NCBI GenBank assembly: GCA_002811645.1
Contig: PDIP01000057.1
Span: forward strand, 115,802-179,801
Direction of reading: 5' to 3'
Source of the DNA: Corallochytrium limacisporum Hawaii
Lineage: Eukaryota > Protista > Pluriformea
DNA length: 64,000 nt
In this document: positions 562 to 63,035 of the stretch, piece after piece
Layout of the letters: each line of letters opens with the position of its first letter
Numbering within the stretch: the stretch's first letter is position 1
The notes under the pieces: generated by a model
Seen by the model: the letters and a program-made list of their open reading frames with translations, nothing else
Told to the model about the DNA's origin: nothing
Database searches by the model: none
Made by a program: the position numbers and the translations under genes

Positions 562-587
562 TTAATCAATAAAATATTATTGATTAA
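562..587. repeat. Perfect AT-rich inverted repeat (11-bp arms, 4-nt spacer)
   Basis: TTAATCAATAA-AATA-TTATTGATTAA. Confidence 0.9.
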
Positions 588-3071: not shown

Positions 3072-5954
3072 GAAATGAAAAATGCACGGCATACGCTGTA
3101 CATAGCCTTTGAAGGAAAAGGCAGGGAAGTAGTGTTGGATAATGAGTTCCGCGGGCATAGGTCATCGGTGTCATCTCCAGCTCCATTGCAGGAACGTAAA
3201 ACGAATGTACGGTGTTCGAAAAGCCATCGTCAGTAAAACTGAAACTGATCACTTCTCCAAGGCACTCCGTGCTTTTTGGCCTGTATTTACATGTCAAAAA
3301 ACTCGTAGGGTACATTTACGGCAGAATGAGGACGCAATTCGTCATACGTCCGTGGCCCCTCCTGTAACACTGCGCCGCTGGTGGCTCTCCTTTGGTGCGC
3401 TCCATGGTTCCATGCACCAACGCTACTGTTTCGATGGTCTGATGTCAGCGGACAGCAGCATGCAGCCATGTCTTGAACCGGTTGCCTTTCTCAACCCTGG
3501 ATCCATTGGTTTTGGATGACGGTTGTGTACGGCTACCTGCTAAGAAACACAGAGATAGATGTAACGGCCGCATACACACGGAGCGTAGGCGGGTCTAGAG
3601 CGGCCAGAGGTAGCAGTGCCCGCTGCGGTGGCAAATGCAAAGGACCGCCATGTCGTCTGGGCAGGAAGCTCGACGGTTGAGCAGCACCATTGGTGGCTTA
3701 TGCTGTACCCGTGGCCATGCTGGCATAAATCATACTCTCTTGGGACTCGGCCATTGCGTGCTGGCGATCATTGCGATAGCGTTCGCGTCAGGTCTCTTGC
3801 GTAGTGCCAGGGGCGCCCCGTTGCCACCCCGCTTCTGTACTTGAGCGTCGGCAAAAAGCCATGGCAGTAGGTAATAAGAGCTTTTGAATGATGTGGACAG
3901 CCGGTGCTTGGGTGTCTTTAGCTATTAAAGAGTGCGAGGAACCCACCAAAAAATGCACAATCACAGCAGGGGCCGGAGCCAACTCTCTTGTCCTTCCCCC
4001 TTCCGCGCTTCCTGACCTCCCGCCGGGCGCTACGGTCCTCCGCCCTCCTAAAATCACCTTCGATGAGGTGATCCGCACGCTTTGGATTTCGTCGGTTCTT
4101 TGGATACTGAGTTCGGGGTCTGGCTTTTTTTTTCGTGCAATCTCCGGGCCATTTTTTTCTTTTTTTGGGAGTAGTAGTGCCCAGTGCGCGGGTCTGCGCC
4201 ATTTTCTTCATCCGGTCGTCGCGCGTGCTGCAAATGGCCCAATGGAAATTTACTCGCTGTGTGTCTGTGTGTGTGTGTGTGGCACAGTCTACCTCTCCGA
4301 CCAAACTCGGCCGTCCGAACACACACACACACGTCCTCTCATGCTTGCAGCCAAGACTCGAGAAGCAAAGCCGTATACGTACGTTGCCAATTCTTCGACG
4401 GTTCTCTCGGTATGGAAAAGGTCAGAGGGGGCACGGTATTGCGTCCCAACCGGTCCACCAAAAAAAGTGCGCAAAAACGGGGTGCTTGCGCGGGGTTGGT
4501 TTGTCTGTGCTACTAAAACCCTCCCTTGTCTTTTTTCTCTTTGGTGTGCGTGCCCCGGCCCCATTTTTATCCATTTTCTGCCCAAGAAAGTTCCATTGCG
4601 GGTGCATCGCGCAAGGCCAAAACGGTCTGGCACGACCCTCCCAAAAACAAAAAAAGAAACAGAAGAACAATCGTCCTCCGCTCGTTTGGAATGTTTCTCC
4701 GCCGAAAAAAGCAATTGGAGACGGCAGGTAGAGATGAGGCGCGAATGCGAAGAGAGAGTTTCCACGGACCACCCAGGTCAATTAAAGAAAAAGGGTTTCA
4801 CAAAAGCGCTTGAAAATGTATTGGCGCCGGCTGAGAATGTGGCGCCCTCGTTTCCCCTTTTTTTTCCGTAAAGTACGTAAGTCTGGGTCCCCCCGGGGGG
4901 AGGGGAAGAGGCGGGTTTCGCTCAGTTGGCAAGCGGGCGGGCCCACCACTACCGGCGCCGTCCTGGATTATGAGTTCCCGGCTGCTGGCTCCAATCGTGA
5001 GCGAGGGCGGGGAAGATGGTGGGACCAGCTCACGGTGTGCTCGTCGAGTCCATATAAAAAGTATAGAGAAAGACTTTCCCTCTATTTTTCTCGGCCGGTG
5101 GCGGGGGAGAGTTCCGTTCTTGCGAAACGCTGAAGCAAGCAAGCGGGGAGCCGGGGAACCAATCTCCAACACCGGGTCAGCCAGCCAGGGAAGGGGAGGC
5201 AGTGAGGGGCAGCCTATCGCAGCGCAACGATTTTATCCTCTCCCCCCTTCCCCCCACTTTTATAATGGTACCGTTCGGGTCGGTGTCCTGTGTAGGACCG
5301 GGGAGAGGCATCTGGCATATTGCTACTTGGCTTTTGGGGGGAGAACGAGACGATGGGTTGGCGGTTTGTGGGGGGGGGAAACGGGGTGTGGATCTGATGA
5401 AAGGTGACAAGGGTTACCCGCCCCCCCCCCCTCTTTTGGGCTTTTTTCTATGTGTTTTTTTTGGTGAGTTTTCGTTGGGAGCACAGCTTTTTGCAGCGGC
5501 CACATTCTTCCGCGCTTCCACGGGCACAAGTGGAGGAAGCGAGGCGTAGGAACTCGAGAAACCCGGTGATATCTTAATTCCCTATATGTGGTCTGGGTTC
5601 GGTCTGATGGGCATTGGCAACTCGGAAGTGCTTGACGATTGGTTCGGAAGCTGCCGGGGTTGTAGTAATGGTGATATCGTGATGAACTGTGAGACACGGG
5701 CTGCGAGATGCTACTTGATCATCGCGAGTTTCAACATTGGATCCGATTCGGACCAGCCAAGAACCTGTGGTAGCTTTCGAGTTGGAAGCATACGGGTGTA
5801 ACAGAGCGTGTTTGAAAAAGTGAGTGGACAACAAGTGAACGTCTTCGCGACCCCGGGTGCAGAGTATTTTGTGTGAAATTCAGAGTCTTGAGCTAGCCGG
5901 CCAATCCTACAACCAGCAGAGTTACGGAACAGATTGAAAGTGAACGTCGCAGTG

Positions 5955-6614
5955 ATGCCAGCTTGTGTCGAAGTGGCGTCAGTCTGCAGCTCAGACCTTT
6001 CGGGAAGCTGGGTGGATCTGGGGGAGCCAATTCCGCGATTCCATGAAGTTGTTGTGAGCCACAGTGGTGAAGGCTCACCCGGAGCAGACTCCCCGCGCAG
6101 CACACACAGCGATATTTCGCATTTGTCACAGCTTGTTAATGAGCTCCTAAATGATGAACAGTTTCAGGGTTCCCTTGCGAACTCTTTGGATGGCGATGGT
6201 CCCGTGGACGCCGTGGGCAAAGACATTCTAAAGCGCAGTCTCAGTGAAATCTACCACTTGAACGAAAAAGCCAAGGAACGTGAATTGGAGGCAAAGTCAG
6301 AAACGCACAGTCGAACTTGTCGCCAGGCTAGTGGGCCCGAAGCAGACAAGGAATTGCCATGCATCAAAAGAGTATGGAGTGTCGCAAGGGACCTCGATGG
6401 CCAAGATCAGCGCACCATTGTGGCCCTCAGGAACTACGGCATCAGCAAACGGAGGCGTCGCAACTCCCTGCGGACAAGAGTCCTACAAGCCAACCTCCAG
6501 GAAGACGCTTCAAGATTCCTTGTGAGTCACCTGGCGCTTCTTGTGGTTGGTCTTTGGCTGGGCAATGATGTGGGAATACCCGGAGCATCTCCTATCCAAA
6601 ATCTCTTCCGGTAA
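5955..6614 (+). CDS. BNIP3/NIX-like tail-anchored protein (putative mitophagy receptor)
   Basis: 219-aa ORF from ATG 5955. It has a Ser-rich N-terminal SDLSGSWVDL LIR motif, a basic KRRRRNSLR segment, and a single C-terminal TM FLVSHLALLVVGLWLG with BNIP3-type SH-x6-GxxxG spacing. Confidence 0.65.
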   Translation: MPACVEVASVCSSDLSGSWVDLGEPIPRFHEVVVSHSGEGSPGADSPRSTHSDISHLSQLVNELLNDEQFQGSLANSLDGDGPVDAVGKDILKRSLSEIYHLNEKAKERELEAKSETHSRTCRQASGPEADKELPCIKRVWSVARDLDGQDQRTIVALRNYGISKRRRRNSLRTRVLQANLQEDASRFLVSHLALLVVGLWLGNDVGIPGASPIQNLFR

Positions 6615-6906
6615 TGAAAAAAATGTGTGCAGTCAAAAATGTGTAAAGACAAACTTCCATCTTCCATCATAAGTATCTTCGTTTTGCCATTCTCACCTCG
6701 TTGCCCCATGGCCACTGCAACAGTGATCAATCTTTTGCTTTTGAAGACGTAAGGTCACAAGACTTACTTAAGAATTCGCCAGTATCATAAGAAAGCATCG
6801 AATTACATGATCTTCCAGTATGAATGGTATTGTTCACGTGTTGTTCAAGGCTAATAGAGTACAGAAAATGTTCTTTAACTATTGTTCTATGTTACATTGT
6901 GCGATA

Positions 6907-6972
6907 TTGTTGCTACCACGGCACCTGTCATTCAATCAATTGTTGCTACCACGGCACCTGTCATTCAATCAA
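6907..6972. repeat. 33-bp perfect tandem duplication spanning the HGH1 stop codon
   Basis: TTGTTGCTACCACGGCACCTGTCATTCAATCAA x2. Confidence 0.95.
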
Positions 6973-8128
6973 GAGACTCGGCTTCAGCTTCAGCCTTCTT
7001 CTCGGTCTCTTTGGCGGCGTCGGCTTCACCAGCAGCATCAGCCTCTTCCTTGGCCGGCCCGCCCTCTAGAGCAGGGCGATTGGCCGCCATCTTGGCACGC
7101 TGTTCGTCAAACGATTTTTGATACTTTTCAGGAATTTCCAGAGTATGTAGGTTCTCGTCACCCTCTACACTAAGCAAAATGTGAATCACGTCCGTTACTT
7201 TCTCGTCGCAATCAGCATTATCTTCGGTCTTGTGGTACTCACGCAAGAGTGGGTAGCATTGACGTGATCGCATGTAGTCGCGCCCCTGCCTGGTTCCGCA
7301 TAGGGCAAAGATTGCTTCTAGAATGGTGAGACGGATCTCAGGATTTGGTTCCCGCTTCTTGTCATCCTCCAAAAACTGCAAGTCCTCCGGCAGGCCCTCC
7401 ATCTCATCGTCCCGGAATTCGTCTTCGGGGCCGGCCAGCGGCATCATGAGCGCCAGGAACAGGTCATCGCCCATGCCCTGGAACATGTTCTCCACACATT
7501 CGTAGTCCATGCCCAGGTTCTTGAGGATCATGAACACAGCCTGGCGAATAAAGTCATCTTCGTGCCGGGAGAAAGTCATAATCTTCTTCAGCTGCTTGGC
7601 ATCATCGGCAAGCAGGGCCTTCCGAACACCGCCCTCCTGTGCCATGTTGGCAATGGCCGGTAGCAGGTACTTCGCCCTCTGCTCCTTCTTGTCATTCACT
7701 CCCGCAGTCGCTACGGTATCAATGAAGAGATCCACCACTTCGGCAATATTCTCGTCCTCGGCCACACACTTTCTCAGAGTAATTGGGCTCCGTGTGATGT
7801 TGTTCAAAGCCATGGCAGTATAGTCAACCATATGGGCCTTGTTCTTCAGGGTGTCTGCAAGAGTGCGGATAAAGTATTTGGGAACCTGCTCAAAAATGGC
7901 GCCATCATCGTGTGCGGTGACGTTCACAGTTAACTGAACAGCAGCATTACCCACAATCTCAGGTTGTCGAATGCATTTGTTCAGTCCAAGCCAGAAGTCT
8001 GGTAGAGATGCAAGAGCCACTGTTACATCCCGGTCGCCAGTGACACTCAGGCAAATCTGGATGGCCTGCATGGACACATCAATACGGTCCGAACTCAGAA
8101 AGCCCGCAATTTCTTTATACTGTTCCAT
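6965..8128 (-). CDS. HGH1: HGH1 (FAM203) eEF2 chaperone, ARM-repeat protein
   Basis: Motifs PLAGPEDEF..EMEGLPEDLQFL..DKKREP, LCGTRQGRDYMR and YPLLREYHKTE are typical of the Hgh1 C-terminus. The first ATG is at 8128. Confidence 0.9.
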   Translation of the reverse strand: MEQYKEIAGFLSSDRIDVSMQAIQICLSVTGDRDVTVALASLPDFWLGLNKCIRQPEIVGNAAVQLTVNVTAHDDGAIFEQVPKYFIRTLADTLKNKAHMVDYTAMALNNITRSPITLRKCVAEDENIAEVVDLFIDTVATAGVNDKKEQRAKYLLPAIANMAQEGGVRKALLADDAKQLKKIMTFSRHEDDFIRQAVFMILKNLGMDYECVENMFQGMGDDLFLALMMPLAGPEDEFRDDEMEGLPEDLQFLEDDKKREPNPEIRLTILEAIFALCGTRQGRDYMRSRQCYPLLREYHKTEDNADCDEKVTDVIHILLSVEGDENLHTLEIPEKYQKSFDEQRAKMAANRPALEGGPAKEEADAAGEADAAKETEKKAEAEAESLD

Positions 8129-8646
8129 GATGAGAGAATATGAAAGCAACCTCTATTCGAACCGAGCTGCCAATTCAAACTCGTTCGAATGTATGCACCT
8201 CGGTACAAGGCCTTCTAATCAGATTCACGAACACGTACTGAGTACCTACGTGAGTAACATGCATGTCCATGCAGTCTGTCTGTTCATACACATGCGCACT
8301 CATACACTTCACAAAACACGCAGCGTTGCTGTCTCTGCTCAGAAGAAACCATTGCGCTTCCAATTGTGTCCCCCTCCCACATGCGCAGGAGGGTCCCATC
8401 GCTCCCCGCTGCGGTGCCCACCTGAATGCAGTGCCTTGGAGAGACCCGCCAGGTTGATTCAATATGAGCAGCACTCCCCGCCCTTTTCTTCCGGAACGTC
8501 CTCCCCCTCCGAGCCAGAAACAGTGTTTGCACCAGTGTATCAATATTTACATTAATTTATTTAACGAGGTTATCAGTGATGTAAGGACAGACTTTGTTTC
8601 TACTACACTTTCTGCGCCCAGACCCGGGCCCACAAAAAAAAAACCC

Positions 8647-9112
8647 NNNNNNNNNNNNNNNNNNNNNNNNNNNNNNNNNNNNNNNNNNNNNNNNNNNNNN
8701 NNNNNNNNNNNNNNNNNNNNNNNNNNNNNNNNNNNNNNNNNNNNNNNNNNNNNNNNNNNNNNNNNNNNNNNNNNNNNNNNNNNNNNNNNNNNNNNNNNNN
8801 NNNNNNNNNNNNNNNNNNNNNNNNNNNNNNNNNNNNNNNNNNNNNNNNNNNNNNNNNNNNNNNNNNNNNNNNNNNNNNNNNNNNNNNNNNNNNNNNNNNN
8901 NNNNNNNNNNNNNNNNNNNNNNNNNNNNNNNNNNNNNNNNNNNNNNNNNNNNNNNNNNNNNNNNNNNNNNNNNNNNNNNNNNNNNNNNNNNNNNNNNNNN
9001 NNNNNNNNNNNNNNNNNNNNNNNNNNNNNNNNNNNNNNNNNNNNNNNNNNNNNNNNNNNNNNNNNNNNNNNNNNNNNNNNNNNNNNNNNNNNNNNNNNNN
9101 NNNNNNNNNNNN
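8647..9112. other. Assembly gap (N run)
   Basis: Run of Ns. Confidence 1.
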
Positions 9113-17162: not shown

Positions 17163-19010
17163 TTACGATGAGGACGGATCGTTCCTGGGCCTCTTCGCAA
17201 CATTGGTATTGGTGTAGTGATCGGGGCGGCATCGTGTTCTGTGCTCGCGCCAGTCCTGACGTTGGCAGCGAGAGGAACAATAGTACACTGTGCGGCAAGC
17301 GGAACAACGACGCCGGGCTGCCGCACCACACGTCTGGCATGTGTGTGTCGTACCGTGCCCAGTGCTGCCATCCTCATCATCACCGGCCTCCGAGGAATCC
17401 TCGAGAGGAACAGGGACTGGGGAAGGTTCACGACCGTCCGAAGTGGCGGGTTGTGGTGCGGTGGGAAGTCGGGCACCGGTGCTTGACGACTGGCCCGCAT
17501 TGTCGTTACTGGCGTCGCTAGTGCTAGGTGCAGTAGGGAAGTCAAGATCTGCCCGTTCCTCACGTGGAGTCATGCGGTCACGGGCTTGTTCTGCCTCCTG
17601 GCGCATGGTTTCCACATTGGAGCCGTGGTCCGGACGCAGCTCAGCCCGGCATGTAGGGCACGAATTGTGGAGGCTTAGCCATTGTTCGATGCATCCTGGA
17701 TGGTAGAAGTGACCGCATGGCATGATCTTGACCTCTCCGCCGGTAGTGTACTCTTCCAGACAGACACTGCAGGCATGACACTCACGAATGTTGTCACCGG
17801 AAGGGGGATAGGGTCTCTGTGGCAAGGCTTCCACCTGTTCCCGAGCGGCTGGTGGATTGCCTTGCGGGCCCTCGGTCATGAGCTGACGCAAGATGTCCTC
17901 AAAGCCTCCCGCAAACAGCAATGGAGGCATCATACGAAAGAGTTGTGCGGGGTCACCACGGAACATGATGCGTTGTGGACCTTGCTGTACGGTCATTCCT
18001 CCCGGATGGAATGTGAATTGACGGAATGCAGCAGTTGGCCTACCAGTACCTGCGCGTGGTTGAGTAGTAGTCTCATCGCCTGTTCTGTTGACTGCTTCGT
18101 CGGTAGGCCCCCGTTGTTCGGGACCCGACTCTGGCTGCTGCTGCTGTGGATCCTGCTGCTGTGGGTCATGCTGCTGTGGGTCATGCTGCTGCGGGCCTTG
18201 CTGCTGGCCTTGCTGCTGCGCAGCATGGCCACGCAATGCTCCAAATATTGCCTGGTTCAAGGCCTCGAAAATGTTTCGCGCACCCGCAGGTTGCGGGCCA
18301 GGGTTCTGTTCCTGCTGCGTCTCACGATTCTCATGCTCACCTTCCCGCTGTGCTGTTGAGGAGGGTACCGGTGCTTCAGAATCCTGGGTCTGTCCTGGGT
18401 ATGTAATTTGTCTTTGGCCTTGATTAGTTGGTCCCGATTGCTGGCTAGGTTCTTCACTTGCACTATTGCCTCTTGTTCGTTGCAGATACAGTATTTGGCC
18501 CGACGGCAGCATAAATAATTGAGTCTCTGTGTCATCTCGCAGCTGATTTCTGTTGTTTTCATCATGCTGTGTCAAGGGCCTAGGGTCACTATCCCGTTCT
18601 TGACCTCCTGTACGTCCCGTTTCTCGACGTTCCGGTTCATCCTGTGTCGGTGGAGTATCGCCGCGAGGCAGGTTTCTAAGCTTAGACGCCATTTGTCGCA
18701 ATTCCTCCAGTGCAGCATCACTCTTCAGCTGTGGGAGCTGATCAAGCCGTAGGCCATCCCGGTACTCGGTCACCAGGGTCTTGATTGACTCCAGATAGCA
18801 CAATGCCATTTCCACACGCTCCTCGTCAGTCATATCCGTGTGTGGGCTGCGTGGGCCTGCAACACCATTGTTCCGCGGGTTCTGCACACCGTCACCAGGA
18901 TTTGTGGTGGTCATGCTCCCATCATTCATGACTGGAGCAGCTGTTTGTAAGGGGCCTTCGGTAGCCCCTGTAGGATCTATGAAGAAATAAAACTGGCCAG
19001 GAAGGTTCAT
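17163..19010 (-). CDS. RING-H2 E3 ligase (RNF126/RNF115/Praja-like) with a C-terminal MYND zinc finger
   Basis: RING-H2: GNPPAA..CSVCLEEY..PCGHFYHPGCIEQWL..SCPTCR. MYND: CQTC..CSAC..YYCSSRCQRQDWREHRTRC. Confidence 0.85.
   Translation of the reverse strand: MNLPGQFYFFIDPTGATEGPLQTAAPVMNDGSMTTTNPGDGVQNPRNNGVAGPRSPHTDMTDEERVEMALCYLESIKTLVTEYRDGLRLDQLPQLKSDAALEELRQMASKLRNLPRGDTPPTQDEPERRETGRTGGQERDSDPRPLTQHDENNRNQLRDDTETQLFMLPSGQILYLQRTRGNSASEEPSQQSGPTNQGQRQITYPGQTQDSEAPVPSSTAQREGEHENRETQQEQNPGPQPAGARNIFEALNQAIFGALRGHAAQQQGQQQGPQQHDPQQHDPQQQDPQQQQPESGPEQRGPTDEAVNRTGDETTTQPRAGTGRPTAAFRQFTFHPGGMTVQQGPQRIMFRGDPAQLFRMMPPLLFAGGFEDILRQLMTEGPQGNPPAAREQVEALPQRPYPPSGDNIRECHACSVCLEEYTTGGEVKIMPCGHFYHPGCIEQWLSLHNSCPTCRAELRPDHGSNVETMRQEAEQARDRMTPREERADLDFPTAPSTSDASNDNAGQSSSTGARLPTAPQPATSDGREPSPVPVPLEDSSEAGDDEDGSTGHGTTHTCQTCGAAARRRCSACRTVYYCSSRCQRQDWREHRTRCRPDHYTNTNVAKRPRNDPSSS
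18135..18219 (-). repeat. Coding 15-nt tandem repeat (PQQHD/PQQQD) in the RING-MYND gene
   Basis: Units such as TGCTGCTGTGGGTCA are repeated. Confidence 0.85.
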
Positions 19011-53707: not shown

Positions 53708-55438
53708 TCAGCTCCATTTCGGTGTGGCGGAGAGGACCATGTCCTTGCCATACTGGGTGTACTGCGGATCCTCCAGCTGAGGTAATTCGACCTTGGCAGC
53801 CTCGCGGCCGAGGGCGTTGAAGCCGTTGAGGAACTTAGGGGAGATGGTCACCACGAGTTGGTCCACGAGACGAGAAGAGAGGAAGGCCTGAATGATGGAT
53901 GCGCCCCCTTCGACCATAAGAGACTCGTAGCCCATTTTTCCGAGATTGTCCAGGACGTGCTCAAGGTCGACCTGACCACCAGTGTTGACCGGGGTCTTGA
54001 CTACCTTGGCACCCAGGTTCTCAAGCTCAGCAACCTTGTCCTTGTTGACCATCGTACCGCACATGATGATAGGCTTGATGTCGTTCTTGAGCAAGCGGCG
54101 GTCGAGGGGAAATCGCAGATGAGTATCCAGCACAACAGGCTGCGGATTTGGTCCTTCAACCAAGCGCACGGTCAGACGCGGGTCATCGGCTACAACGGTG
54201 CCAATACCGACAAGGATGGCAGAGTGGCGAGCCCGAAGACGGTGGGTCATTTCCATACTTTCCTCGCCACTGATTGCCACCTGCTTACGTCCCCGATCAG
54301 CGATACTGCCGTCCAAAGTTTGTGCAAAGGTAAGTGTAACATATGGTCTGGCTGCAGCAGTGCTTTCGCTTACACGGCGCCTATTGAGCTTGCGCAGAGT
54401 GCTAATGGATGGAGAGGGAGCCCGCTGAAGGCTGCGACCGCTACTACGCCGGACCTGACGTTCCTTGGCAATGGCCTTCATGTCCACGGGACCCTTTTCA
54501 TCCGAGTCACTATCCCCACTCCGCTCACTGAAGCTGCTCTCGTCTTCGGTCTGGCCCGTAGTTTCCCGCATATCAATGCGAATGCCCGCTTCCCTATCCT
54601 CCAGGCGAATCCGCTGCTTACCGTCGGAGCGCATGGTCTTGCGCATAGTTATACCGTTGACCGTAGCCTGAGAAGGTCCAGACTCGTCTGTCTTGAGCTC
54701 ATCCAGCTGCTGCGCCAGAATGTTGAGGTTGAGCATATGGTCCATGCGCTTGACCTTGGTGGCGAGGTAGCTAAGATTGTGCTCGCTGCGCAGGGCCGGA
54801 TGCATGGGCATGCGGTCAGCTATATTGATGCCATATTGCTGGAGATCTTCAATTTTCCGAGGGTTGTTAGTGAGGAGTTGCACTGACTTCACTCCTAAGT
54901 CCTTCAGCATGTCGGCAGCAATACGGTAGTCGCGTTCATCGGCGCCATGGCCCAGCATCAGATTTGCCTCGACTGTGTCATACCCCTGATCCTGCAATCT
55001 ATACGCTTTAAGTTTCTCTTTGAGTCCGATGCCACGACCTTCCTGACGAAGGTAAAGGATGATACCCCGACCCTGCTCAGCGACGAAATCCATGGCTGTC
55101 CGCAACTGTTCCCCACAATCGCATCGCAACGATCCCATGATGTCGCCGGTAAAGCACTCGGAGTGCACTCGCACCGGAAGCTTTTCCGCATTCTTAGGAT
55201 CCCCGACAACAAAGGCCAAATGTTCCTTCCCGTCGTACTGGCTGTCATAAATATGGAGATCGAACGGACCAATTGATGTGGGAATGGTAGCAGAAATCGC
55301 TGAGAGCTCGGGTTCGTTCTTCAAAACCTCTTTCAATTTGTCATGGGCCACTTGCGCCTGTTTACCATGTTGCTCAACATCGGTCCCAGAGTCCCGTGTC
55401 ATGTTGAAACTGTCGCTTGCTTCGCCTTCAACGTACAT
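53708..55438 (-). CDS. Bifunctional riboflavin enzyme: GTP cyclohydrolase II (RibA) fused to RibD-C/Rib7-type pyrimidine reductase
   Basis: RibA motifs VRVHSECFTGD..SLRCDCGEQL, QEGRGIGL and LLTNNPRK. Reductase motifs PYVTLTFAQTLDGSIA, ILVGIGTVVADDPRLT and LMVEGGA. Confidence 0.92.
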   Translation of the reverse strand: MYVEGEASDSFNMTRDSGTDVEQHGKQAQVAHDKLKEVLKNEPELSAISATIPTSIGPFDLHIYDSQYDGKEHLAFVVGDPKNAEKLPVRVHSECFTGDIMGSLRCDCGEQLRTAMDFVAEQGRGIILYLRQEGRGIGLKEKLKAYRLQDQGYDTVEANLMLGHGADERDYRIAADMLKDLGVKSVQLLTNNPRKIEDLQQYGINIADRMPMHPALRSEHNLSYLATKVKRMDHMLNLNILAQQLDELKTDESGPSQATVNGITMRKTMRSDGKQRIRLEDREAGIRIDMRETTGQTEDESSFSERSGDSDSDEKGPVDMKAIAKERQVRRSSGRSLQRAPSPSISTLRKLNRRRVSESTAAARPYVTLTFAQTLDGSIADRGRKQVAISGEESMEMTHRLRARHSAILVGIGTVVADDPRLTVRLVEGPNPQPVVLDTHLRFPLDRRLLKNDIKPIIMCGTMVNKDKVAELENLGAKVVKTPVNTGGQVDLEHVLDNLGKMGYESLMVEGGASIIQAFLSSRLVDQLVVTISPKFLNGFNALGREAAKVELPQLEDPQYTQYGKDMVLSATPKWS

Positions 55439-60484: not shown

Positions 60485-61444
60485 ATGGCAGGCGACGTAA
60501 ATGAAGAGGACGAGATCCGTGAAAAGGTTGCGGAATTGGTCGCGTACAAAATTGCAACGACTAAGGAATGGAATCGGATTTGTGATTTGTATAGTAAGAT
60601 AAAGAATACTAAAAACACCGAGAACTATGAAGAGATGTGCTTGGATCTTTTCCGAAAATGCGAGGCTTTGCGAGAGTTCGAAGTGGAGGACGAAAGTGCT
60701 GAGGCAGTGAATACGAGGCAACCGCAGCAGACCATTGCACCGGAGCATCGCAGTCACAATGTTGCTTGGAGCGAAAAGGAACAGGAACTGCTGAACTTTC
60801 TACTAATTAAGTATCCACCGGAGAAGATCAAGTCGAATCGCCACCGGAAGATTGCTGCCGAGTTCCCAACGAGGACAGCGCGCCAGGTCGAGTCAAGAAT
60901 ACAGAAGGTCGAGACCTGGAAACGCAAACAACGCCGCCAGGCACGGAGGAAGCAGAATGTGAAGAAGATGGAATCCAGCAAAGAGCCTGAATTGGGGAGT
61001 CGTTCAAAGACAATAGTGTCAGCTGCCGATACAAGCTACCGTGAAGCACTTGCGCGTCAAGGTGTCTATCCCGCGATGCTAGAGGACTATGTGCCGCCTC
61101 GGGTACTCATGGAAGGTGATGCCGCAGGCCGGCCAGTATCAGTACCATCAGCCAGAAAGAACGGTAACCTTGATGAATCTGACCACCACATTGGGTACGC
61201 TTGCGATGGCTGCGGGATCGAGCCGATCATCGGACCGCGGTACGAGTGTATCTCTTGCCGGGAAGCCGCACCGGCTGGTACGGAGGTCAGCGTAGATTTT
61301 TGCAGCGTGTGCCATGATAAGCAAGTCCGTGGTGACACTTGGATTCACCTTCGGGGCCATCGTCAGAAGATCCATAAGAAAGCCGTGGATGCCACCCTCC
61401 TAGAGTTCAATTATCTGATCCCAGAAGACACCCCCGGGTATTGA
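60485..61444 (+). CDS. ZZZ3: ZZZ3-like SANT + ZZ zinc-finger protein (ATAC subunit)
   Basis: SANT WSEKEQELL..LLIKYPPE..KIA..RTARQVESRIQK, ZZ H.GYACDGCGIEPI.G.RY.C..C..DFCSVC, and a terminal FNYL.P. Confidence 0.85.
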   Translation: MAGDVNEEDEIREKVAELVAYKIATTKEWNRICDLYSKIKNTKNTENYEEMCLDLFRKCEALREFEVEDESAEAVNTRQPQQTIAPEHRSHNVAWSEKEQELLNFLLIKYPPEKIKSNRHRKIAAEFPTRTARQVESRIQKVETWKRKQRRQARRKQNVKKMESSKEPELGSRSKTIVSAADTSYREALARQGVYPAMLEDYVPPRVLMEGDAAGRPVSVPSARKNGNLDESDHHIGYACDGCGIEPIIGPRYECISCREAAPAGTEVSVDFCSVCHDKQVRGDTWIHLRGHRQKIHKKAVDATLLEFNYLIPEDTPGY

Positions 61445-61525
61445 CATAGACAGGTATTGTACATTGTATTGTATAAATGCGTTGTAATTATTTGATAATT
61501 CTTGTGCAAACTCTTTGTAGCGAGG

Positions 61526-61825
61526 CTACCCATATGCTTCTACCAATGCATACTGGATGTTCAATTCTCCATTGCTCTCCTTGAAACACGCATGAAGATT
61601 CTCAAGCGACTCTGTTGCTGTGGGAATGAAGGATTGCCCAATGTAGCAGAACAAGGCACTACCTTCCCCTAGTCCTAAGAGACCTCTCAGGATCGATACA
61701 ATCTTCCCAAAGTTATCCTGTGCGTTAACTTTGAACTTTTTCTTCTTTAAGATGGGAGCATTACCCGTGGCCACAAAGCGCACCGTCACCTTTCCCGTGT
61801 CTACGGCTGGCGCTACTTCGGTCAT
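61526..61825 (-). CDS. ATG12: Ubiquitin-like autophagy protein Atg12
   Basis: Motifs KVTVRFVATGNAPILKKKKFKV and LFCYIGQSF.P, ending in EAYG with the C-terminal Gly. Confidence 0.93.
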   Translation of the reverse strand: MTEVAPAVDTGKVTVRFVATGNAPILKKKKFKVNAQDNFGKIVSILRGLLGLGEGSALFCYIGQSFIPTATESLENLHACFKESNGELNIQYALVEAYG

Positions 61826-62303
61826 TGTGTGCTTTGTTCTATTCTATCCCCATAGTGTCTCGGAGCTACCAAACAGTCTTTACTGTGCCATTGTCTGTCA
61901 TTGAGATCGTACTGCGTGTGGTGCATGTAACAAGTGAACTACCTTTCGCAAGAGTGCATGTCACAACTAATTTCTTCCGCAACACAAGGCCCAACACATC
62001 AGCGCCGTGCCTTGGGGAAAACACCAGAACTTCGCAATGCGAAGACCCGTCCCGTCAGCCCCCCCTTTCCGGGTCTCCTTTCCCTGGCGCCCCGGGGGCA
62101 ACTCCGGCCCACCCGTTTCGTCTGCGTCTGCGGATCCTGTGGTATTTCACGAGCAAGGGACTACGGTGCTTCGAGTTTCCTATCATCGACCCCGGTGAAT
62201 GACAGACATGGTCTCATATTGACGATGCAAGGACGAAAACGACAACTTATGGACGCTTCGAGCGCAGGTGGTGTAGCTGCCGGAGGAACTTAGTGTAGTC
62301 AAC

Positions 62304-63035
62304 ATGGACTTTGATCAAGAGTCACCGGGAAGCACCAGCAGTAGTGGTAGTGCAGAACTGGACTCTGTGTGGAAGCCGGGACTGGAGGCACTGATCGATG
62401 AATACGACCAATACGAACGTAATGTAGCCCGTCTGCAAGCCCCCGTCGATAAGGAAACCGAGAACTTGGATCACCGAGTCAGAGATGCTTTGCTCGATGC
62501 GTACCAGCGCGGGCTGGAACAGCGCAACAGTCGACACGCTCTGGCTCAGCGTTTGAGGGTACACGATCTCGGTGATAATGACGAAGCAATTGGAGCATAC
62601 CGTAAAGTGGCTCGTCTGCTCTCGGCAGAAAATTGGCAGCACTACCTGGCATCACACCGCGCACTCATGAAGCTCGAGGACAGGGTGCACGCAGCTCAGA
62701 GATCCTCACCATCTGAAGGCTCAACTGGAGCAGAGACCAAGCCGAAACCCAAGCCCAAAAATTTCCGGCTGGACCGCCTGGACGGAGTGGAATTACTCAC
62801 GGCCGAGGAGCGGGATCTGTGTACGCTGATCAGACTGGAACCGAAGACCTACCTTAACATCAAGGCGGTCTTCACCAGGGAGGACCAAAACCTCGGCGGT
62901 ACCTTGCGGCTCCGTCGCGCTCGCCAACTGATCCGCATCGATGTCAATAAGACGAGACGCATCTACGATTTTTTGGTAGATCGAGGACTGATTGCGCAGA
63001 CCAAACCAAACAAAGATAGACAGAGAGGCAAATAA
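62304..63035 (+). CDS. Ada2/TADA2A-like protein (Ada boxes + SWIRM) lacking N-terminal ZZ/SANT
   Basis: SWIRM LLTAEERDLC..IRLEP..Y..GGTLRLRRARQLIRIDVNKTRRIYDFL and the Ada-box-like ALLDAYQRGLEQR..YRKVARL. Confidence 0.8.
   Translation: MDFDQESPGSTSSSGSAELDSVWKPGLEALIDEYDQYERNVARLQAPVDKETENLDHRVRDALLDAYQRGLEQRNSRHALAQRLRVHDLGDNDEAIGAYRKVARLLSAENWQHYLASHRALMKLEDRVHAAQRSSPSEGSTGAETKPKPKPKNFRLDRLDGVELLTAEERDLCTLIRLEPKTYLNIKAVFTREDQNLGGTLRLRRARQLIRIDVNKTRRIYDFLVDRGLIAQTKPNKDRQRGK

What the first reader, a model, noticed from the sequence alone, without database searches (positions are those of the whole stretch)
5955..6614. BNIP3/NIX-like mitophagy receptor in a probable non-animal
Seen: a 219-aa protein with N-terminal S-D-L-S-G-S-W-V-D-L (WVDL at 6009-6020), a WxxL LIR in a Ser-rich context. 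A basic RRRRNSLR segment precedes one C-terminal TM, SHLALLVVGLWLG (6525-6563), followed by a short tail. Known (recalled): BNIP3 has SLQGSWVEL and NIX has GLNSSWVEL, and their TM SHLLAIGLGIYIG dimerises via Ser-His and GxxxG. The spacing is identical here (S0, H1, G8, G12). The family is usually treated as animal-specific (worm DCT-1), and yeast uses the unrelated Atg32. Inference: receptor-mediated mitophagy of the BNIP3 type may predate animals.
Basis: partly seen in the sequence, partly recalled or inferred. Interest (0 to 1): 0.85.

Follow-up and report, generated by a model that had tools for sequence, protein, structure and literature searches.

The report
BNIP3-like autophagy receptor in Corallochytrium
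A single-celled marine relative of animals expresses a small membrane-anchored protein that carries, in the right order and spacing, the Atg8-binding motif and the membrane-anchor signature of the BNIP3/NIX mitophagy receptors (published as animal-only), but it lacks the family's most conserved core, so shared ancestry is likely but not proven.

Summary
The ORF and motifs are as described. The gene is single-copy, unspliced and present in two putative RNA runs. The host is almost certainly Corallochytrium limacisporum, not an animal.

Standard homology searches fail: no Pfam PF06553 hit, no relatives among 1.8 billion representatives, and whole-profile P is only about 0.002-0.02.

The LIR block scores inside the family range. 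The TM block is moderately significant. LIR plus TM in family order scores 29 bits (0/60,000 global shuffles; best of 153 real ORFs 7.7). Genome-wide, the two family patterns co-occur in one ORF only, this one.

New here: an MER-like stretch (V61-Q69, with the key Leu) in the expected place, not significant alone.

Against: the W-x-W-[DE]-W-S-S-R-P core (PPTC7 site) is absent, TM position +4 is Leu instead of a small residue, no basic residues follow the TM, and no intermediate homologue was found.

Verdict: a probable, highly divergent BNIP3-like tail-anchored autophagy receptor outside animals (about 0.65). Mitochondrial localisation is unproven. The findings search (this genome only) showed no earlier report on other DNA.

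The parts
5955..6614 (+). Intronless ORF, 219 aa, single-copy orphan with one C-terminal hydrophobic segment (tail-anchor topology inferred)
5769..6838 (+). Extent of the putative transcript (contigs of two runs guessed to be RNA), about 186 nt 5' leader without ATG and about 200 nt 3' trailer; strand taken from the ORF, since contigs do not show it
   Evidence: (X3 5769-6818, X4 5769-6838)
5994..6020 (+). BNIP3-type LIR/AIM, D14-L15-S16-G17-S18-W19-V20-D21-L22; S18 is the equivalent of the phospho-serine S17 of BNIP3
   Evidence: 22.6 bits on a family-only PSSM (family 5th percentile 16.8, median 26.1; best background site 14.8 of 65,128); S17 conservation in PMC5526904
6135..6161 (+). MER/SLiM-like stretch V61-N-E-L64-L65-N-D67-E-Q69 (candidate Atg18/WIPI-binding helix); L65 aligns with NIX L75 and fly L49; the invariant Ala is replaced by Glu
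6375..6389 (+). W141-S142-V-A-R145, lying where the W-S-S-R-P core should be; at most a vestige, no PSSM support
   Evidence: spacing (core to S-x-R 20-39 aa; 26 here); core block not found
6447..6485 (+). Basic run plus S171-L-R173, resembling the family's basic + S-[ILVM]-R block, 20 aa before the TM Ser (family 22-28)
   Evidence: 4.0 bits, 52/65,128 background sites, local-shuffle P 0.054
6516..6563 (+). C-terminal transmembrane segment F188-G203 with S191-H192 and G199xxxG203
   Evidence: 6.4 bits; 3/65,128 background sites; 2/145 TM-like segments; local-shuffle P 0.0025
6564..6611 (+). 16-aa tail; length fits the family (TM Ser to end 29 aa, equal to the family median) but no K/R in the first 10 residues and net charge 0

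Best explanation
The gene encodes a highly divergent relative of BNIP3/NIX, descended from a receptor already present in the holozoan ancestor. Shown: a single-copy, unspliced, apparently transcribed gene with one C-terminal hydrophobic segment, and an LIR and TM signature matching animal BNIP3 in order and spacing. Inferred mechanism: (1) the protein is inserted post-translationally as a tail-anchored protein, N-terminus in the cytosol, most likely in the outer mitochondrial membrane (about 55%; ER or peroxisome possible); (2) it self-associates through G199xxxG203 with S191/H192 hydrogen bonds, perhaps more weakly than BNIP3 because +4 is Leu; (3) W19/L22 bind the cell's single Atg8, tuned by phosphorylation of S16/S18; (4) the helix around L64-L65 may dock on an Atg18/WIPI propeller; (5) this tethers the organelle to the forming autophagosome. 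The PPTC7-binding SRPE core is missing, so animal-type PPTC7/FBXL4 turnover was either lost in this lineage or added later in animals.
For: PSSMs built only from 168 natural animal BNIP3 proteins: LIR 22.6 bits, within the family range, background tail 1.2e-8 per site, 0/40,000 local shuffles. TM 6.4 bits, local P 0.0025. Under a deuterostome-only PSSM the TM scores 5.5, against medians of 9.5 for ecdysozoan and -3.6 for lophotrochozoan true members. Ordered LIR+TM 29.0 bits: 0/60,000 global shuffles (maximum 14.3), best of 153 real ORFs 7.7. Whole-genome pattern scan: 8 LIR-context and 54 TM-pattern hits in 24 Mb, with one co-occurrence, this ORF; the patterns match 79% and 86% of family members. 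Spacing lies in or next to family ranges. Atg8, Atg12 and PROPPIN genes are present. The host is a holozoan, where such a homologue is plausible a priori.
Against: No PF06553 hit at E<=10 for the whole protein or five pieces. Whole-profile P is only 0.003-0.011 and hhalign probability at most 14.6%. The W-x-W-[DE]-W-S-S-R-P core, kept even in the ctenophore and (partly) the cnidarian sequence of the published set, is absent. The MER and S-x-R blocks are not significant alone. No basic residues follow the TM. No intermediate homologue was seen in three word-index searches or the 1.8-billion phmmer search, although one search showed only the best 120 of 491 hits. Monosiga lacks the family (PMC5526904). 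The candidate was picked post hoc from a very large scan.
Confidence: 0.65

Rival explanations
1. Convergent receptor: an independently evolved tail-anchored organelle-autophagy receptor (a functional analogue in the way Atg32 or Atg43 are), whose W-type LIR with upstream Ser/acidic residues and GxxxG-containing TM resemble BNIP3 because of shared function.
For: The strongest signal is the LIR, a motif that arises repeatedly (own knowledge). GxxxG is the commonest TM dimer motif (own knowledge). The family-specific core is absent, there are no intermediates, and the tail is atypical.
Against: The match includes positions a generic LIR does not demand (Leu at W-4, 86% in the family; Ser at W-1; Val at W+1). 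Ser-His eight and seven residues before the GxxxG is rare: only 2/145 background TM-like segments score as well. The basic S-L-R block and the tail length also fit.
Confidence: 0.17
2. Chance resemblance: a lineage-specific tail-anchored protein (for example a membrane tether with a central charged helix, aa 86-125) with no role in autophagy, picked out by look-elsewhere effects.
For: It is an orphan in all searches. Each DNA pattern alone occurs at control frequency (8 vs 8 and 54 vs 46). Whole-profile scores are insignificant at proteome scale.
Against: My estimate of the chance expectation is about 1e-5 to 1e-4 per proteome for LIR+TM at these scores and positions (from, assuming about 3.4 million residues and about 2% suitably placed tail anchors), and about 1e-3 for the cruder DNA-pattern co-occurrence.
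Confidence: 0.16
3. Animal contaminant or horizontal transfer from an animal.
For: The family is published as animal-only.
Against: The gene lies in a 282,774-bp contig with flat DNA depth (143-155x), among intronless genes including a GTP cyclohydrolase II-RibD fusion. It is present in two separate putative RNA samples of the same organism and has no close animal match.
Confidence: 0.02

Closest known systems
BNIP3 / BNIP3L (NIX) / invertebrate BNIP3 and DCT-1 (Pfam PF06553)
   Same: About 200 aa with a largely low-confidence (probably disordered) N-terminus; L-x-[GDE]-S-W-V-[DE]-L LIR near the N-terminus with the S17-equivalent; MER-like L-L-x-D-x-Q downstream; basic + S-x-R block; single C-terminal TM with [ST][HN]-x6-G-x3-G; TM-to-end distance of 29 aa
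   Different: No PF06553 hit; no W-x-W-D-W-S-S-R-P-E core (PPTC7 site, PMC11316107); MER lacks the invariant Ala and the following R/H-E-S; TM +4 is Leu, not small; no basic residues after the TM; found in a unicellular holozoan
Yeast Atg32 and other transmembrane LIR receptors (FUNDC1, BCL2L13, FKBP8)
   Same: Membrane-anchored protein with a cytosolic LIR/AIM (general architecture, PMC12339401 and own knowledge)
   Different: Not compared by sequence here. FUN14/FUNDC1-family genes exist separately in this genome (two copies) and the ORF has no FUN14, Bcl-2 or FKBP domain

Membership tests
BNIP3/NIX (PF06553) | Profile match above the Pfam gathering score (26 bits) | tested here: not met
   No hit at E<=10, whole or in pieces; own family HMM 3.1 bits; hhalign at most 14.6%
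BNIP3/NIX (PF06553) | N-terminal LIR S-W-V-[ED]-L with conserved preceding Ser and Leu at W-4 | tested here: met
   22.6 bits, inside the family range, 0/40,000 local shuffles
BNIP3/NIX (PF06553) | MER/SLiM helix with central Leu (NIX L75, fly L49) that binds WIPI/Atg18 | tested here: inconclusive
   L65, D67 and Q69 match in the expected place, Ala replaced by Glu; -3.6 bits, P 0.30 (motif function)
BNIP3/NIX (PF06553) | Trp-rich W-x-W-[DE]-W-S-S-R-P-[ED] core (BH3-distal SRPE, PPTC7 site) | tested here: not met
   No positive site (family minimum 48 bits, though the family set was selected on this core); only W141-S142..R145 at the expected distance; degenerate in Drosophila too
BNIP3/NIX (PF06553) | Basic + S-[ILVM]-R block 22-28 aa before the TM | tested here: inconclusive
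   S171-L-R173, 20 aa before the TM Ser; 4.0 bits, P 0.054
BNIP3/NIX (PF06553) | Single C-terminal TM with [ST][HN]-x6-G-x3-G | tested here: met
   S191, H192, G199, G203; P 0.0025; 2/145 background TM-like segments
BNIP3/NIX (PF06553) | Small residue at TM +4 (A176 equivalent of the tandem small-xxx-G-xxx-G zipper) | tested here: not met
   L195; family S/T/A 96%, V 4%; the role of A176 is from my own knowledge, the paper was not held
BNIP3/NIX (PF06553) | Basic residues directly after the TM | tested here: not met
   0 K/R in 10 aa; 161/168 members have two or more
BNIP3/NIX (PF06553) | Outer mitochondrial membrane localisation, dimerisation, Atg8/WIPI binding, mitophagy induction | not testable with these tools
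   Needs experiments; only monomer folding was available (mean pLDDT 44)

The most novel reading that the evidence does not exclude
BNIP3/NIX-type receptor-mediated mitophagy (LIR plus WIPI-binding MER on a Ser-His/GxxxG-dimerising mitochondrial tail anchor) already existed in the last common ancestor of Holozoa, before animals, and the PPTC7/FBXL4-binding core is a later animal addition or was lost here. This protein would be the first non-animal example (none found in the papers searched).
Probability: 0.4. Interest if true: 0.72.

Novelty: new variant of a known kind. Interest (0 to 1): 0.58.

Why it matters
The dedicated phylogenetic study concludes that BNIP3-domain proteins are restricted to animals and arose with HIF-1a in early metazoan evolution (PMC5526904). 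A homologue in Corallochytrium, on the deepest holozoan branch (PMC5560861), would move the origin back to the holozoan ancestor and uncouple it from HIF. It would also point to the LIR and the Ser-His/GxxxG anchor as the ancient parts and the PPTC7-binding core as dispensable or later, and would imply that profile searches miss such motif-only receptors in other protists. The organism grows in axenic culture (PMC5560861), so the claim is directly testable.

Tried and rejected
No result: Pfam whole and in five pieces; PDB sequence search (one E=2 coiled-coil match rejected); word-index search and phmmer of 1.84 billion representatives, self only; ESM Atlas by features, twice; PF06553 and alignment A1 on the own genome (the first look found no candidates, so uninformative); viral contigs; exact-contig look-up. 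The AlphaFold2 single-sequence model (pLDDT 44) and its atlas fold search (best TM by query 0.32) carry no information. The hybrid query of candidate plus an amphioxus-like fragment returned only chordate-named or unnamed PF06553 proteins.

Strain variation gave no coding differences, so no dN/dS was possible. I first took L033 for a cnidarian; one search shows it is amphioxus-like. No cnidarian, sponge or ctenophore sequence could be obtained by reference, so the PSSMs are bilaterian-only. One pattern was over the 35-place limit and was resent shortened by its first codon.

By-eye resemblances not used as evidence: E-V-V-V-S-H-S-G to the ctenophore sequence, D-S-P-R-S to the family S-P block (it lies before, not after, the MER-like stretch), and D-A-x-x-F-L to amphioxus.

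Full report
Observation. It has one hydrophobic segment, F188-L202 (19-mer hydropathy 1.66, at the low end of the family's 1.63-2.1). Contigs of two runs that the tool guesses to be RNA cover 5769-6818 and 5769-6838 without a joint and stop short on both sides, while DNA covers the whole stretch evenly. This fits a discrete unspliced transcript. The ATG at 5955 is the first in that stretch, the identical protein is in EukProt, and the gene is single-copy.

Host. The genome has 24,109,830 bp in 286 contigs. The window is gene-dense and its long genes are single open frames, including a GTP cyclohydrolase II-RibD fusion and a C2-WW-HECT ligase. The DNA runs date from 2017 and the putative RNA runs from 2015. 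This matches Corallochytrium limacisporum: 24.1 Mb, 7,535 genes, 0.0 introns per CDS kb, RNA data from a 2015 study, on the branch sister to all other holozoans (PMC5560861). The identification rests on these matches; no tool named the organism for my window, though an earlier follow-up on this genome names the same genus.

Conventional homology tests fail. Pfam gives nothing at E<=10 for the whole protein or five pieces. The protein has no relatives in the word-index search, among 1.84 billion representatives, in the PDB or in the ESM Atlas. To test the family directly I fetched natural BNIP3 genes from metagenomes with a degenerate pattern for the Trp-rich core that excludes the vertebrate codon, confirmed them as PF06553, and extended the set with arthropod, mollusc, annelid, amphioxus and fish proteins. 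A whole-length HMM of 132 members gives the candidate 3.1 bits (P 0.003; 220/20,000 shuffles). hhalign finds only the TM, with probability 2.5% and 14.6%. These scores mean nothing at proteome scale.

Motif-level tests succeed for two blocks. I built five PSSMs from 168 members, weighted equally across three clade groups, without the candidate. LIR: 22.6 bits, within the family range (5th percentile 16.8, median 26.1), best of 65,128 background sites 14.8, 0/40,000 local shuffles. TM: 6.4 bits, 3/65,128 sites, 2/145 TM-like segments, local P 0.0025. The family's own TM is variable: under a deuterostome-only PSSM true ecdysozoan members score a median 9.5, lophotrochozoans -3.6 and the candidate 5.5. 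The basic S-L-R block is marginal (P 0.054). The Trp-rich core is absent. In family order and spacing, LIR+TM scores 29.0 bits: 0/60,000 global shuffles (maximum 14.3), 0/60,000 shuffles in 30-aa windows, 1/60,000 in 15-aa windows, and the best of 153 real ORFs reaches 7.7. Caveat: anchor residues were fixed by the regular expressions that defined the blocks, which inflates their weight slightly (168 of 185 members passed).

Whole-genome check. A family LIR-context pattern occurs 8 times in 24 Mb (control 8) and a TM pattern 54 times (control 46). They match 79% and 86% of the family members tested, so they are not fitted to the candidate alone, although I wrote them after seeing it. Only one of the 8 LIR sites has a TM-pattern hit downstream in frame: this ORF, 177 codons apart. 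The naive expectation is about 1e-3. From the PSSM tails I estimate 1e-5 to 1e-4 per proteome (inference, assuming about 3.4 million residues and about 2% suitably placed tail anchors). Allowing for the many motif pairs a reader might have recognised, this still favours common descent, helped by the hit lying in a holozoan.

Departures from the family. (1) The W-x-W-[DE]-W-S-S-R-P-E core binds PPTC7 and drives FBXL4-dependent turnover (PMC11316107). It is present in the ctenophore sequence and partly in the cnidarian one, and degenerate in Drosophila. Here only W141-S142..R145 sits at the expected distance. (2) TM position +4 is Leu; the family has S/T/A in 96% of weighted members. In BNIP3 this is A176 of the helix-packing face (own knowledge). 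(3) No basic residue follows the TM, against two or more in 161/168 members. Such charges usually help direct tail anchors to mitochondria (own knowledge), although the low hydrophobicity and the upstream basic run point the same way. Animal BNIP3/NIX also reach ER and peroxisomes (PMC11555697).

Mechanism. Most likely a tail-anchored selective-autophagy receptor with its N-terminus in the cytosol: the LIR binds Atg8, the MER-like helix possibly binds Atg18/WIPI as in fly and mammals (10.1101/2024.12.30.630714; PMC12339401), and the TM dimerises through Ser-His and GxxxG. The partners exist: one Atg8, an Atg12 and PROPPIN genes. All binding, dimerisation and localisation steps are inferred. 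I put homology with receptor function at 0.65, a convergent receptor at 0.17, chance at 0.16 and foreign origin at 0.02. The full claim, homologous and mitochondrial, stands at about 0.4.

Novelty. PMC5526904 states that BNIP3-domain proteins are restricted to animals and absent from Monosiga. Paper searches combining BNIP3 with Capsaspora, choanoflagellates, Holozoa or protists, and Corallochytrium with autophagy, showed no non-animal member in the titles, abstracts or passages I read. Because the profile and core tests were run and not met, I do not file it as a formal member. It works like a BNIP3 by inference and is scored as a new variant of a known kind. The findings search, which covers this genome only, showed no earlier report of such a protein on other DNA.

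Noticed in passing
window 61529-61768 (-): Atg12 gene (APG12, E 4e-19) on the same contig, about 55 kb from the candidate; it is the weak second ATG8-family hit, so the genome has one true Atg8.
   Followed up: yes
G000:C185:55131-55427 and G000:C3:51636-51932: Two FUN14/FUNDC1-family genes; whether either has an LIR was not checked.
   Followed up: partly
window 3500-5768: No putative RNA contig over 4800-5768, and the RNA word share for 3500-9000 (0.42-0.46) is about what this gene plus its downstream neighbour explain. The long upstream stretch looks untranscribed and its ORFs (3888-4871, 4970-5407, no Pfam hit) may be spurious; it is unusually long for this compact genome and may be regulatory.
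   Followed up: partly
window 6906-6971: Perfect 33-bp tandem duplication at the 3' end of the convergent DUF383/DUF384 (HGH1-like) gene.
   Followed up: partly
window 562-587: Perfect 11-bp AT-rich inverted repeat with a 4-nt spacer.
   Followed up: partly
window 53708-55438 (-): GTP cyclohydrolase II fused to a RibD C-terminal reductase domain, a riboflavin-pathway fusion.
   Followed up: no
window 17163-19010 (-): RING finger plus MYND finger protein, 615 aa.
   Followed up: no
window 60485-63035 (+): Myb/ZZ-like ORF (60485-61444) and SWIRM/Ada2b-C-like ORF (62304-63035) with the Atg12 gene on the opposite strand between them; both resemble parts of Ada2-type proteins, and whether they are one gene or two was not checked.
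   Followed up: no
window 5369: The DNA run X1 reads G where the assembly has T, a possible assembly error or allele in the upstream region.
   Followed up: no
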